Below, piece after piece: positions 27,348 to 64,000 of a DNA stretch of 64,000 bases. The notes beneath the pieces were generated by a model. The model was given only the letters and a program-made list of their open reading frames with translations, was not told where the DNA came from and ran no database searches. The stretch covers positions 1 to 64,000 of the IMG/VR virus record IMGVR_UViG_3300042544_001590; one strand, written 5' to 3'. The position numbers were made by a program, and so were the translations under genes. Each line of letters opens with the position of its first letter. Positions within the stretch are counted from its first letter, which is position 1.

Positions 27348-29272
27348 AAATTATGAATATGGAACACACACTAATTAGGTATATTAGAAACAAGAAGGGA
27401 CAACCCCGTGGGGTGGTCGTAGCTCTGCGGGATAAGAACGAGGTTTGCTATGGCTATTCCATCTGCAATCCGATTGATCGTTGGGATAGGCATGAAGGAT
27501 TGAACCGAGCCATTTCCCGTGCAAAGGAAAGGGAATATGATCTTCCCACCGCTCCAAACACAATCAAACAAATTGTGGAAGGATATGAAAATCTCTCCAA
27601 ACGTGCCGTGAAATATTTCAAGGATTTGCCAAGGGAGATGGTGGAATTTGATAGCATTGAAATCATTCAATAATGGTTGAAGAAAAAACATTACCTCTCC
27701 ACGAACTCAAATACTACCATGGTGAAAGCCTTGGTTTTATATTTTCTGGTGTGATACCATCTTCCAATGATGCCATCCAGCGATTGGCGAACAATCTGGT
27801 GAGGTGGGGGGTATCCAAAAAGCTACCGGAGTTCTATGTTCGGGTGACTCCAAATGAAGTGGCATTCATTTACGCTCCCGATTCAGAATTTAAGCAAGCG
27901 GCATTCTATCAAGCATGTGGGCAGTTCAACGTGATGGGAATATTTACCATTGACACATTGGCATCATGGCTTAAATTACATTAATATGAAAAAGAAATAC
28001 TTAGTGGAAGCTTTGGCAGCTTTTGAGGATGATGATCACATCATGATTGGGGATGATGCTTTATCATGGGTTCCAAAAATTACTAAAATATGCGGTGGTA
28101 GAATTCCATATATGGTATATTATTGTATTCGTAATAAGGGGCATACTGGTAGATGTTATTGCACCTGTAAGGATGTGGACTTCGATGCTGAAATATTTGA
28201 TTGATGGACTACCAATTGATTATGCTACCATTGGAAGCTGGGGGAACATGTATCCTTGATTATGATCCTGAAATCCATGAGAATATGGAAAAATCCATCA
28301 TGCTATGTGGTAGGGAGGATTTGGTGTTGTGTTCCGTTCCCGTGGTATATCAGGGTAAGTGTTCCTTACACTTGATAAGTGATAATGAGAATTTAGATGA
28401 CTTTTGGGAAACGTGTGTTAAGGTAAGCGACGATGAATAACGAAATAATATTACCGATTGAATTGTTTGATGGTCGCCTATCTCTCCTTGAGATAGGGAC
28501 AGTGGGCGTTATCATGTCTTATCCCCACCAAGCCAAGGATGTGCTTGACAAATGGGATGGAACTGCTATCTTCAACCAGACGATCAACCAGATGATGGAT
28601 CGGGGAATGATTACCGTGGAAGGTGATGAACTGGTATTGAAAATCGATGATGAACAACCAAAGTATAATAATATGAAAATTGAAACGGCATTAAACGAAT
28701 TGTATAACAATGGAATTTGCAATGAGGACAACGTGGAAGCGATCCGTGATGTCATGGAAGAGCTTTCCAACGAATTCTATCATTTGGGTTATGAGGATGG
28801 TAGGATTGATTTTAACGTGGATGGTGATACATTCACTGCATATGGTAAGAAAGAGGACTTCTCTTAAAAACTAGACTACACTGATACCATGAAAGCAAGT
28901 TATCGCAAAACAAAGACTGGATATTACCCTGTAATTATCTTCAATAACAAATCGCGCATGACGCATCGTGTCCAATGTTTCACAAAAGATTCGGCAATTA
29001 GGCTTGCGGAAAGTGTTATCAACGACATTATCAATGTCGGGATTATCTCAGAATATCAAGAAAATGAACATTCAAGCATACGTTAATATTGAGCCTATAA
29101 CAATCAAGAGAGAATTGACCAGAGGTGAGTGTCTGGAATTCATCACGGAAATTGATGCTGCATACAAGGATGTGGGTTTCACGTTGGAATTGATCAAAAT
29201 CCTGATGAAGTCTGTTAAGGGTGATCTGGAGGATTTTGAATGGAATGAATTATTGGAATCATTCACGAAATT

Positions 29273-29707
29273 ATGATCAAGATACCTGAAGAAATTATAA
29301 ACAGATTCAATTTACCAAATACGGCATTTTTATCTGGAAGTAGAGCCATGGGATTCCCAAGAGAAGGGAGTGATTGGGATGTTTGCTTTCCCAATCACTT
29401 AATAGCTGATATTAAAGACAAATGTGATAATATCAAGGAAAGTGAATACTTTGAGGGATTTGTAACACAATTTGGAGAATATAAAGTGAATTTTATCCCT
29501 CTCCATCCCTTAGATATGGTTTGTTGGATTTTAGCAACCAAAACAATTGCTGATTTGAACAACACCTTCGAACATACCAGAATTAAAGAACCGGATATGC
29601 GCCATGGGATATTTGAAACATTCAGGGGAGTGTTCAAAACGACCATTGTTTACGAGGGAGCAAAGGCACTTGATCCGATAATTGAAAAGCTGCTTGCCGA
29701 TTCTTAA
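29273..29707 (+). CDS. Minimal nucleotidyltransferase-fold protein
   Basis: LSGSRAMG...SDWD (GS..DxD). Confidence 0.6.
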   Translation: MIKIPEEIINRFNLPNTAFLSGSRAMGFPREGSDWDVCFPNHLIADIKDKCDNIKESEYFEGFVTQFGEYKVNFIPLHPLDMVCWILATKTIADLNNTFEHTRIKEPDMRHGIFETFRGVFKTTIVYEGAKALDPIIEKLLADS

Positions 29708-62800: not shown

Positions 62801-64000
62801 GGTTCGAAACCTTCCTCGGGCTTCCTTTTCTTAAAAACTAAACCAGAATAACACCATGACGAGACAATATACAAACCGACTGCTGGAAATGATCGAAGAT
62901 GGTCTGCTTGACAAGGACAACGTGATCATGGCTTGTGTCAAATACATGTCGGAGGACGATGTGGAGGACATGATGAAATGCAACGAATTTCTGGAGGACG
63001 AAGAAGAGGAGGATGAGGACGAATAAAAACTAGCGTAAGATAGCCTCACCATGAAACGATACGCCATAAGATCAAAACAAAAGGAAATAGGATATATCAA
63101 ATTTACAGTTCCCACCATTGAAGTATTACATTTCAATTCTCCTTTCTTTCTTGGATCGTGGTGTGCTGACAATGGAACACTGTGGACATGTTTGGATGAT
63201 GGGAAAAACATTTTTGAGAATGAGAATGAAGCCAAGGAAAGATTGGCCGAAATCATCAAGGAATTGTTCGCTTAAAAACTAGACCAGAATAACACCATGA
63301 TAATCACATACACCGCAAGATACGCAGATGGTGAAAAAGTCACGTTCACGGGAAAATTCGATGACCTGAAAGACTTTGGGAATTTCGCTCACCGTGAGAG
63401 CAAAAGGCCGAATTACAATGGTGATATGTTCATCATCATTAGCATCGTTTAAAAACTAGCCTAAGATTATCGCACCATGAAACAACTCATCCTTGACACC
63501 CTCGCCGCGTTCTTCCTGTTCGCGTTCACTCCCATCGTCCTGTTCATCCTGATCGGATAACCTTTATAAAAACTAGCGTAAGCTCGTAGCACCATGAAAC
63601 TGAAAATAACAAGCACCGCACCAGTCGCAGTCGAAACCTATGTTGAGGGTAATATTGTCCTCGGGCATTTCGAGTACAACGAGGGTGATTCCGCCCTTGG
63701 GGTCAATCCCCACTTTGTCCTTGTCGATGAAGTGTCGGATGACTTCCCAATCCTTTGGGAAGGGCAGGAAGTGACCATTCACAACGGGTGGTTCATCTTC
63801 GATGACGTTCACTTCGGAGAAGTGAAATTCAAGTTCGCCGGATATTAAACCAACCCCGAAAGGGGTTCAATCCCCCTTATAAAAACTAGCCTAGACTGAT
63901 CTCGTAACCAACACCAACCAACACCATGACCAACAAACAAATCATCGCAAAATTCGTGCAAGGCGCAACCAAGGGCAAGAACAGCCTGAAAAGCATGTTC
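59839..64000 (+). CDS. Array of very small module-headed hypothetical genes (59839, 60076, 60301, 60532, 60722, 60937, 61147, 61411, 61936, 62511, 62856, 63051, 63297, 63477, 63594, 63926 partial)
   Basis: Each start follows a module, mostly at the fixed distance. Confidence 0.7.
61771..61869 (+). repeat. Four 18-bp direct repeats TG(T/C)GACAAAATGACGCAC in a non-coding gap
   Basis: Copies at 61771, 61810, 61834, 61852. Confidence 0.92.
62136..62435 (-). CDS. Small HNH endonuclease-like protein
   Basis: CNKC..CKSC, then CICG...[29 protein letters not shown] 5 nt before ATG. Confidence 0.8.
   Translation of the reverse strand: [99 protein letters not shown]
62674..62825 (+). ncRNA. Unknown ~150-nt RNA with tRNA-like T arm and acceptor-like closure
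   Basis: GCCGGAG/CTCGGGC, GAGGG-TTCGAAA-CCTTC, GCTTTTGTC/GACGAAAGC, GTCCC/GGGAC, TCCCG/CGGGA; follows module at 62639. Confidence 0.6.

What the first reader, a model, noticed from the sequence alone, without database searches (positions are those of the whole stretch)
28865..63300. Neighbouring modules are identical even in variable positions: footprint of duplication or recombination-driven gene accretion
Seen: TAAAAACTAGCGTAAGATCAGGACATGA at 61123 and 61387; TAAAAACTAAACCATAATAAAGCCATG at 57031 and 57247; TAAAAACTAAACCATAATCACACCATGACC at 59815 and 60277; TAGACTACACTGATACCATG at 28865 and 30493 (one mismatch at 29705); one-mismatch pairs at 47361/47616 and 62832/63273. The genes between are unrelated. 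Established: repeated early-promoter stem-loop cassettes (PeSL) shuffle modules in some T4-type phages. Inference: a far more minimal repeat serves as the crossover site for excision/insertion of single-gene circles.
Basis: partly seen in the sequence, partly recalled or inferred. Interest (0 to 1): 0.72.

Follow-up and report, generated by a model that had tools for sequence, protein, structure and literature searches.

The report
Promoter modules shuffle phage gene cassettes
In an uncultured T4-like lake phage, a 27-base stop/promoter/start module fills the gap in front of about 110 small genes and also serves as the crossover site where gene cassettes are inserted, lost and moved between related phages; this is a smaller version of a known mechanism of phage genome evolution.

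Summary
The window is the first 64 kb of a 207-kb T4-like phage from lake metagenomes. TAAAAACTA occurs 93 times on the + strand (0.65 expected) and heads a 27-nt module: the upstream gene's stop codon lies inside the 9-mer, then a TAnnnT -10-like hexamer, 6 nt, then ATG.

Near-identical modules (at least 14 of 15 variable bases) are enriched among immediate neighbours: 8 against 0.6 expected, and still enriched after local shuffles. The flanked genes show no paralogy.

Related contigs back recombination. A third relative has the empty site, with one module carrying the same variable bases. Across 129 records, modules flanking present/absent cassettes are near-identical in 18-26% of cases against 2% for other pairs.

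So the modules work like the PeSL cassettes of T4-type phages. They lack a -35 box, a Shine-Dalgarno sequence and a stem-loop, so they are not PeSLs in the strict sense. Circles could not be tested. Some indels also occur at junctions without modules. Verdict: a new variant of a known kind, of moderate interest.

The parts
7577..63906 (+). The array continues to about 73.6 kb of the genome, and 6 more copies lie at 157-166 kb.
   Evidence: logo
28865..28891 (+). Module with variable part GACTACACTGATACC; left flank of cassette block A-B-C.
29705..29731 (+). Module with one mismatch (C at position 18, the otherwise invariant T of the hexamer); lies between cassettes A and B.
30493..30519 (+). 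Module identical to the one at 28865; right flank of block A-B-C. Identity to G003 drops here from 97-99% to 88.5%.
28892..30492 (+). Cassette block A (to 29704), B (29729-29995) and C (30017-30492). The order is B-C-A in G003-like relatives, the block is absent in L081 and L093, and other relatives have other contents.
47361..47387 (+). Module; one-mismatch partner of 47616. The gene between them (47385-47618) is absent from relative L030, which has a single module at the site.
47616..47642 (+). Module; partner of 47361.
57031..57057 (+). Module identical to 57247. It heads gene 57055-57249, which is a paralogue (41% aa identity) of 60937-61122.
57247..57273 (+). Module identical to 57031. 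It heads a 79-nt mini-cassette with only a short (about 15-codon) ORF.
59815..59844 (+). Module; identical over 30 nt to 60277 and one mismatch from 60052. It abuts the 3' end of tRNA-Arg.
60052..60078 (+). Module; one mismatch from 59815 and from 60277.
60277..60306 (+). Module identical to 59815.
61123..61150 (+). Module identical over 28 nt to 61387. The gene between them (61147-61389) has no BLASTN match in G005.
61387..61414 (+). Module identical to 61123.
62832..62858 (+). Module; one-mismatch partner (lag 2) of 63273.
63273..63299 (+). Module; partner of 62832.
57874..57900 (+).
60698..60939 (+).

Best explanation
The repeat is a 27-nt intergenic module that fills the whole gap between neighbouring genes.

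Anatomy (shown):
- An invariant 9-mer, TAAAAACTA, which contains the upstream gene's stop codon in two reading frames.
- A TAnnnT hexamer with the features of a -10 promoter element.
- A 6-nt spacer ending in a pyrimidine.
- The ATG of the next gene, placed exactly where the transcription start would fall.

Function (inferred): the module is most likely the early/middle promoter of this T4-like lake phage and gives leaderless mRNAs. Each small gene is then a self-contained cassette.

Recombination (shown by comparison with relatives): because every cassette is bounded by the same module in the same register, general homologous recombination between two modules yields intact genes on both sides. 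The phage encodes a UvsX/RecA-like recombinase and no site-specific recombinase. Relatives differ by scarless insertion, deletion, transposition and circular permutation of one-to-three-gene cassettes, with junctions inside modules.

Origin of the neighbour pairs (inferred): they are the direct repeats that flank such events. Either the resident module ends up on both sides of an incoming cassette, as in Campbell-type integration of a circle, or as when two copies of the site are each invaded by one end of a linear fragment. Or the pairs are simply the best substrates for the next deletion. Whether free circles are the intermediate is not shown.
For: Anatomy:
- Logo with invariant positions 1-9, A14, T18, Y24 and ATG at 25-27.
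- The upstream stop codon lies inside the 9-mer in 85 of 109 cases, and the T18-to-ATG spacing is 6 nt in 74 of 109.
- Strand bias is 115 forward to 2 reverse.
- There is no Shine-Dalgarno signal anywhere in the genome.
- The first 60 nt from the module start are unusually unstructured.
- The late genes show the same leaderless geometry: YTAAATA-N5-ATG in 32 ORFs, including portal and sheath. In phage Aeh1, CTAAATA begins at -12 from the start site (PMC1524935), which fits this spacing.

T4-type identity and recombination machinery:
- Portal_T4, PolB and tail sheath are present, as is a RecA/UvsX-like gene.
- No tyrosine or serine recombinase was found.

Recombination at modules:
- G000 has X-M-A-M-B-M-C-M-D; G003-like genomes, 97-99.7% identical, have X-M-B-M-C-M-A-M-D. 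This arrangement is seen in at least 6 independent assemblies.
- L081 has X-M-D, with a module whose 15 variable bases equal those flanking A-B-C in G000.
- The gene at G000 65830 sits in three different contexts, and each time its module equals an adjacent one.
- 53 of 70 alignment ends between G000 and G005 fall in the 15% of sequence near modules.
- Modules flanking present/absent cassettes are at least 14/15 identical in 11/43 cases against 28/1254 (p=1e-8). A conservative count gives 7/39 against 24/1124 (p=4e-5).
- Within one hexamer class, neighbours still share the spacer more often than distant pairs (p=2e-5).
Against: - No transcription start was mapped; no RNA run was listed.
- Two tRNAs start at module position 19 and a third at about position 20, directly after the hexamer. 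A start at position 25 would truncate them, so those modules cannot serve the tRNAs as leaderless-type promoters.
- There is no -35 box, and the factor that reads the 9-mer is unknown. No T7-like RNA polymerase, MotA or AsiA was found.
- Gene-precise indels also occur at junctions without modules, at ATGA stop/start overlaps. In the module-poor 7.5-27 kb region, module-bearing gene boundaries by my rough count carry no more alignment ends than other gene boundaries. Part of the breakpoint enrichment is therefore just 'breakpoints at gene ends'.
- Simple reciprocal crossover does not by itself make both flanking modules identical unless donor and target were already alike or were converted.
- 27-30 nt is short for efficient homologous recombination (my own knowledge of T4 work, not tested here).
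Confidence: 0.72

Rival explanations
1. Regulatory sub-classes. The variable bases set promoter strength or timing, co-regulated genes sit together, and neighbours look alike for functional reasons without any recombination.
For: Variable-part subtypes are clustered by region: GAATACAAT at 7-42 kb and 157-166 kb, AACCATAAT at 47-60 kb, GCGTAAGAT and GCCTAAGAT at 61-67 kb. Shuffling within blocks of 6-10 modules already raises the expected number of like neighbours from 0.6 to 3-4.
Against: Lag-1 pairs exceed the local shuffles (P=0.003-0.014). Within one hexamer class, neighbours still share the 6-nt spacer. A purely functional cause does not predict that like pairs flank present/absent cassettes. 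It also does not predict that one gene takes the local module in three different contexts.
Confidence: 0.12
2. Tandem duplication of whole cassettes followed by divergence of the genes, leaving only the modules alike.
For: Two duplications do exist in the region: 57055-57249 against 60937-61122 (41% aa identity), and the unit of a 22-aa ORF plus tRNA-Leu at 57590-57768 against 58964-59143.
Against: The genes next to near-identical modules show no similarity (BLASTP none; Smith-Waterman z<2 for all 20 pairs in G000 and 8 in G005). The true paralogues do not have identical modules. Fifteen weakly constrained non-coding bases staying identical while the proteins diverge beyond recognition is implausible.
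Confidence: 0.03
3. Local gene conversion or template switching homogenises adjacent modules without moving any cassette (concerted evolution).
For: Even pairs not known to flank a polymorphism are near-identical more often (2.2%) than all pairs in G000 (0.56%). In the A-B-C rearrangement, the T/C variant at position 18 stayed with the site rather than with the gene.
Against: A conversion tract would need homology on both sides, but to the right of the variable part only the ATG is shared. Conversion does not explain empty sites, permutations or the link with presence/absence.
Confidence: 0.08
4. Gene-boundary illegitimate recombination plus selection for intact genes. Breakpoints sit in modules only because the module is the whole intergenic space.
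For: Indels at ATGA overlaps without modules. An insertion with one junction inside a gene, leaving a chimeric ORF. No excess of breakpoints at module-bearing over module-less boundaries in 7.5-27 kb (with my rough count of boundaries).
Against: Module-bounded events leave no scar and keep the 27-nt register. The flanking modules of polymorphic cassettes are alike ten times more often than expected, which random breakage does not predict.
Confidence: 0.05

Closest known systems
PeSL (promoter-early stem-loop) cassettes of T4-type phages RB49/phi1, T4/PST and KVP40/nt-1 (Arbiol et al. 2010, PMC2839356; Comeau et al. 2014, PMC4122927)
   Same: A repeated early-promoter motif lies between the upstream stop codon and the downstream start codon. 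It is concentrated in a hyperplastic region of small ORFans in a T4-type phage. Insertions, deletions and replacements between close relatives are bounded by the motif. The proposed mechanism is homologous recombination between motifs.
   Different: The motif here is 27 nt rather than about 100 bp of conservation. It has no -35 box, no AT-rich upstream tract, no Shine-Dalgarno sequence and no stem-loop or terminator. It has an invariant 9-mer that overlaps the stop codon. There are about 110 copies against about 50 in phi1 and RB49. Mini-circles, shown physically for PeSLs, could not be tested here.
PmSL (middle-mode promoter stem-loops) of Vibrio phage nt-1: Mot box plus -10 box (PMC4122927)
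   Same: An upstream specificity box plus a -10-like box without a -35; also implicated in shuffling.
   Different: The box here is TAAAAACTA, only 3 nt upstream of the hexamer, not a TGCTT box near -30. No MotA or AsiA homologue was found. There is no stem-loop.
Integron gene cassettes (attC/attI with IntI integrase); own knowledge
   Same: Arrays of single-gene cassettes, all in one orientation, bounded by a repeated site, with the cassette thought to move as a circle.
   Different: There is no tyrosine or serine recombinase. The site is a promoter, so each cassette has its own promoter rather than sharing one. The site is not an imperfect hairpin.
T4-family late promoters (TATAAATA in T4; CTAAATA starting at -12 in Aeh1, PMC1524935)
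   Same: The genome's late-type motif YTAAATA matches the family. Its fixed N5 spacing to the ATG shows the same leaderless geometry as the module.
   Different: The module is a different motif, used for the early-region genes.

Membership tests
PeSL (sensu Arbiol et al. 2010) | Sigma-70-like early promoter with both -35 and -10 boxes and an AT-rich upstream tract | tested here: not met
   A -10-like TAnnnT is present, but positions -11 to -1 upstream of the 9-mer carry almost no information, so no -35 hexamer is conserved. Canonical -35/-10 sites are not enriched: 50 found against 40 +/- 7 in shuffles.
PeSL (sensu Arbiol et al. 2010) | Stem-loop acting as terminator or attenuator within the motif | tested here: not met
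   Folding energy of -60..-1 equals the controls, and 0..+60 is less structured than controls. Terminator-like sites number 25 against 19.4 +/- 4.9 in shuffles.
PeSL (sensu Arbiol et al. 2010) | Shine-Dalgarno sequence and start codon at the 3' end of the motif | tested here: not met
   The start codon is there. Shine-Dalgarno-like motifs are at background level, 13-14%.
PeSL (sensu Arbiol et al. 2010) | Located in hyperplastic regions, immediately upstream of ORFans | tested here: met
   109 of 115 copies lie at 7.5-74 kb in front of small genes that mostly have no Pfam match.
PeSL (sensu Arbiol et al. 2010) | Indels and replacements between close relatives are bounded by the motif | tested here: met
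PeSL (sensu Arbiol et al. 2010) | Mini-circles formed by recombination between neighbouring motifs | not testable with these tools
   Only Logan contigs were served. All reported joints have sides of 21-31 nt, which is a module-only match. The circular permutation A-B-C to B-C-A is compatible with a circle but does not prove one.
Bacterial -10-only / leaderless promoter | TAnnnT hexamer with A at position 2 and T at position 6, and a purine start about 7 nt downstream preceded by a pyrimidine | tested here: met
   Of 109 modules: A14 in 106, T18 in 105, Y24 in 106, A25 in 99. Spacing is 6 nt in 74.
Bacterial -10-only / leaderless promoter | Mapped primary 5' end at the start codon | not testable with these tools
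   No RNA run was listed. The tRNAs that begin at module position 19 argue against a start at position 25 for those copies.
T4-type myovirus | T4-like portal (gp20), family-B DNA polymerase, tail sheath, UvsX-like recombinase and a TAAATA-type late promoter | tested here: met
   The portal is at most 29% identical to that of any isolate.
Integron | Site-specific tyrosine recombinase (IntI) next to the array | tested here: not met
   No Phage_integrase or Resolvase match in the 207-kb genome.

The most novel reading that the evidence does not exclude
These lake phages run a recombinase-free, integron-like cassette system. A single 27-nt stop/promoter/start module makes every ORFan an autonomous leaderless transcription unit, so a cassette is expressed wherever it lands. 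Cassettes travel as small circles or fragments between co-infecting phages. The perfectly invariant 9-mer is read by an unknown phage-specific transcription or recombination factor rather than by the host sigma factor alone.
Probability: 0.3. Interest if true: 0.75.

Novelty: new variant of a known kind. Interest (0 to 1): 0.6.

Why it matters
PeSL-mediated shuffling is the main proposed route by which T4-type phages gain and lose accessory genes. So far it rests on a few pairs of cultured phages and on a composite motif of about 100 bp.

This case shows the same behaviour in an uncultured freshwater lineage with a motif stripped down to 27 nt. The stop codon, promoter and start codon are fused, and dozens of natural variants are available from public metagenomes.

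That gives a statistical test rather than anecdotes: like modules flank polymorphic cassettes about ten times more often than other module pairs. It suggests that very short portable homologies are enough to organise a cassette economy.

The genome-wide leaderless layout of both early and late genes, if confirmed, would also be an unusual expression strategy for a T4-type phage, and a clue to the host.

Tried and rejected
- Literature search for the 9-mer: only chance hits in unrelated papers.
- Megablast of the first 20 kb against isolated phages: no match.
- Read evidence for circles: 24 lake-water DNA runs hold the sequence, but only as Logan contigs. The seven reported joints all have sides of 21-31 nt, which is module-only similarity, so they say nothing.
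- RNA runs: none was listed, so no start-site mapping.
- T7-like RNA polymerase, MotA and AsiA as readers of the 9-mer: none found. Only a weak sigma region-2-like hit at 133016-133162, which had no Pfam match when scanned.
- Tandem duplication: rejected.
- PeSL stem-loops and -35 boxes: absent.
- Rfam: only the five tRNAs.
- Scan of bacterial genomes for the 18-mer TAAAAACTAGAATACAAT, to find a host: 25 single hits, about the number expected by chance (my estimate). Many are in AT-rich Bacteroidota, where the last bases happen to form an ATG, and none has a module array. Uninformative.
- Whether the variable part travels with the downstream gene or stays with the site: both occur. The empty-site module equals the right flank in about 8 events and the left flank in about 4. 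Orthologues with a changed upstream neighbour have only slightly lower module identity once gene divergence is controlled.
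Full report
**What the window is.** The window is the first 64 kb of a 207,489-bp IMG/VR virus record with 95-bp direct terminal repeats. The genome encodes a T4-type portal (Pfam Portal_T4, E=1.5e-87), a family-B DNA polymerase and a tail sheath, and a RecA/UvsX-like recombinase at 144374-145498. The portal is at most 29% identical to that of any isolated phage, and megablast against isolated phages finds nothing. Twenty-four lake-water or freshwater DNA runs hold the sequence. 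It is therefore an uncultured, distant member of the T4-type myoviruses from lakes.

**The observation.** TAAAAACTA occurs 93 times on the + strand and once on the - strand of the window, against 0.65 expected. In the whole genome it occurs 115 times forward and 2 reverse, with 109 copies between 7.5 and 74 kb.

I scored the 15 variable positions that follow the 9-mer. Pairs with at least 14/15 identity number 33 of 5886. Eight are immediate neighbours (0.6 expected; none of 5000 shuffles reached 8) and five are at lag 2 (P=6e-4). After shuffling only within blocks of 10 modules, 3.0 like neighbours are expected and 8 are seen (P=0.003). The Mantel test of identity against distance gives P=0.013. 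If columns were independent, 0.036 fully identical pairs would be expected; 7 are seen.

Within one hexamer class, modules at lag 2 or less share the 6-nt spacer more often than distant ones. Pooled over five genomes this is 37/168 against 103/1042 (p=2e-5). The neighbour effect recurs in relatives G001 (5 against 0.77) and G005 (3 against 0.52).

The genes beside like modules are unrelated. BLASTP finds only two paralogue pairs in the whole array, neither with identical modules. Smith-Waterman z-scores for all flanked pairs are below 2. Self-BLAST shows repeats no longer than module size, apart from a tandem repeat inside one gene and one duplicated unit of a small ORF plus tRNA.

**Anatomy of the module.** The logo reads: W at position 0, invariant TAAAAACTA at 1-9, R at 10, T/C at 13, A at 14 (106 of 109), T at 18 (105 of 109), five weakly constrained bases, Y at 24 (106 of 109), then ATG at 25-27.
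- The stop codon of the upstream gene is the TAA at positions 1-3 in 52 cases and the TAG/TAA at positions 8-10 in 33. So 85 of 109 genes end inside the 9-mer, in two different frames. A TGA ending at position 0 accounts for 5 more.
- The distance from T18 to the ATG is 6 nt in 74 modules and 9 nt in 17.
- T13-A14-n-n-n-T18 has the signature of a bacterial -10 hexamer, and 7 nt after T18 lies the A of the ATG, preceded by a pyrimidine. That is the geometry of a leaderless mRNA.
- There is no conserved -35 and no enrichment of canonical -35/-10 promoters or of terminators. There is no stem-loop near the modules, and the first 60 nt from the module start are unusually unstructured (mean -3.9 against -9.0 kcal/mol).
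- No Shine-Dalgarno signal appears in early or late genes.

**Support from the late genes.** A T4-family late-type motif, YTAAATA, precedes the ATG of 32 ORFs of at least 50 aa at exactly 5 nt, and 6 more at 6 nt. These include portal and sheath. In phage Aeh1, CTAAATA begins at -12 from the start site (PMC1524935). That places +1 on the A of the ATG here as well. Both promoter classes thus point to a genome-wide leaderless layout.

**A caveat on the start site.** Two tRNAs (59643, 59738) begin at module position 19 and a third (57791) at about position 20, directly after the hexamer. A start at position 25 cannot serve them. They must be processed from upstream read-through, or the true start lies earlier. 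No RNA data were available.

**Comparison with relatives.** The 18-mer TAAAAACTAGAATACAAT matches more than 114 stretches of IMG/VR contigs. Three relatives were especially useful.
- *G005 (121.8 kb)* is 75-95% identical to 47.6-80 kb of our genome. Only about 38 of about 66 cassettes are shared, and their order is shuffled. 53 of 70 alignment ends fall in the 15% of sequence near modules.
- *G003 (177.6 kb)* is 97-99.7% identical over 27.3-42.2 kb. Our genome reads X-M-A-M-B-M'-C-M-D. G003 reads X-M-B-M'-C-M-A-M-D, with every junction inside a module and no scar. The G003 order is found in contigs from at least six different metagenomes, and ours in an independent 100% identical contig, so this is not an assembly artefact.
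- *L081* has X-M-D. Its single module carries exactly the 15 variable bases that flank A-B-C in our genome at 28865 and 30493. Other relatives have X-A-n-B-D, B-D and further contents.

Identity between G000 and G003 drops from 97-99% to 88.5% exactly at module 30493. The change from A-B-C to B-C-A is what excision of a circle through the two identical outer modules, followed by re-entry through the inner one, would give. A duplication-deletion pathway through the same modules gives the same result.

**A cassette seen in three contexts.** The gene at 65830 lies between two identical modules in our genome. In G005, and in an independent contig, it lies between the 64218-like and 64348-like genes, flanked by two modules identical over 27 nt to the single module we have at 64348. 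In G001 it sits in a third context and again carries the variable bases of an adjacent module.

**A systematic test.** I cut 129 records into 1341 module-to-module cassettes and clustered them into 661 families. I then listed every case where two families are adjacent in one record and separated by 1-5 cassettes in another; there are 43 such cases.
- The two modules flanking the extra cassettes are at least 14/15 identical in 11 of 43 cases, against 28 of 1254 for other module pairs at the same lags (Fisher p=1.2e-8).
- After collapsing to unique module pairs and dropping one event that is not module-only, the figures are 7 of 39 against 24 of 1124 (odds ratio 10, p=4e-5).
- Where the flanking modules differ, the empty-site module equals the right one in about 8 events and the left one in about 4. 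Crossovers therefore fall on either side of the variable part.

**Limits of the recombination reading.**
- Gene-precise indels also occur where there is no module, at ATGA stop/start overlaps in 17-24 kb.
- One 1-kb insertion in G003-like genomes has its right junction inside gene B, leaving a chimeric ORF and a 125-nt direct repeat.
- In the module-poor 7.5-27 kb region, module-bearing gene boundaries do not, by my rough count, carry more alignment ends than module-less ones. Part of the breakpoint enrichment is therefore simply 'breakpoints at gene ends'.
- What specifically implicates the modules is the scarless junctions, the empty sites with the same module, and the tenfold association between module likeness and cassette polymorphism.
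- Free circles could not be tested. The runs are served only as assembled contigs, and every reported joint is a module-only match of 21-31 nt.

**Comparison with what is known.** PeSLs of T4-type phages are composite motifs conserved over about 100 bp. They comprise an AT-rich tract, -35 and -10 boxes, a stem-loop terminator, a Shine-Dalgarno sequence and a start codon. They are concentrated upstream of ORFans in hyperplastic regions, bound the indels between close relatives, and form mini-circles that were shown physically (PMC2839356; extended to T4/PST and KVP40/nt-1 in PMC4122927).

Our module shares the location, the promoter-between-stop-and-start position and the shuffling behaviour. 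It fails the tests for a -35 box, a stem-loop and a Shine-Dalgarno sequence, and it is a quarter of the size. It works like a PeSL but is not one in the strict sense. It is not an integron: no tyrosine or serine recombinase is encoded.

**Verdict.** This is a new variant of a known kind. Interest is moderate (0.6). The mechanism has a clear precedent, but the minimal fused stop/promoter/start module, its roughly 110 copies, the statistical footprint and the apparently genome-wide leaderless design are new details worth following up.

Noticed in passing
G000 genome outside the window, e.g. 94719 (-) portal, 198332 (+) sheath, 112996 (-); in the window 41927 (+) and 43768 (+): A late-type motif, YTAAATA, sits at a fixed 5 nt (32 ORFs) or 6 nt (6 ORFs) before the ATG of ORFs of at least 50 aa. 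By T4-family geometry the late mRNAs would also be leaderless. No Shine-Dalgarno signal appears anywhere in the genome.
   Followed up: partly
window 59624-59642, 59720-59737 and about 57770-57790: Two tRNAs (Met 59643, Arg 59738) begin at module position 19 and a third (Ile 57791) at about position 20, directly after the -10-like hexamer. The next module begins directly after the CCA end of tRNA-Arg. This fits tight packing of cassettes, but it conflicts with a transcription start at position 25 for these copies.
   Followed up: partly
window 62639-62831: A module with no ATG after it heads a non-coding stretch of about 190 nt. The stretch has a tRNA-like 3' part and a moderately stable fold (z=-2.4). 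It has no Rfam match at gathering score and ARAGORN does not call it. It may be a small RNA like the extra stable RNAs in T4's tRNA cluster (my own recollection).
   Followed up: partly
window 61771-61875: Four direct copies of a motif of about 18 nt (TGTGACAAAATGACGCAC) lie in a non-coding gap just upstream of module 61912. They may be a protein-binding array.
   Followed up: partly
window 62136-62462 (-) and 20635-22017 (-): These are the only sizeable minus-strand ORFs in the array. One is a 108-aa Cys/His-rich protein in an AT-rich gap with no Pfam match. The other is a 460-aa ORF in a low-GC island (GC 0.35). They may be mobile or defence-related insertions.
   Followed up: partly
window 57901-58557: This gene contains a long internal tandem repeat (58190-58509, about 80-89% self-identity) that encodes an Ala/Ser/Trp-rich repeat.
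   Followed up: no
window 57590-57768 and 58964-59143: A duplicated unit of module, 22-aa ORF and tRNA-Leu(TAA), 74% identical. It is a true cassette duplication, yet its two modules are only 10/15 alike.
   Followed up: partly
window 59180-59626: A 148-aa protein with a Lar restriction-alleviation domain just below the Pfam cutoff (28.0 bits against 28.6; E=2.5e-6). It starts with GTG 9 nt after the hexamer. It is a likely anti-defence gene among the ORFans.
   Followed up: no
L053 2075-3163 (same arrangement in G003, at 64873-66030 of my 80-kb G003 string): Close relatives carry a 1-kb insertion at the module that corresponds to window 29993. It encodes repeat proteins with a recurring YSNGKRHREDGPAVE-type motif. 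The right junction lies inside gene B, giving a chimeric 56-aa ORF and a 125-nt direct repeat. This is a non-module, microhomology-type event.
   Followed up: partly
window 17978-18751 and 23360, compared with G003: G003 has four or five extra small genes inserted at stop/start overlaps (AATGAAA-type junctions) that have no module. Gene-precise indels are therefore not restricted to modules.
   Followed up: partly
window 30517-31473: Gene D, just right of the A-B-C hot spot, is a KaiC/RecA-like P-loop ATPase (Pfam KaiC ATPase family PF06745, E=4.6e-11). It is only 88.5% identical to its G003 counterpart although its neighbours are 97-99% identical.
   Followed up: no
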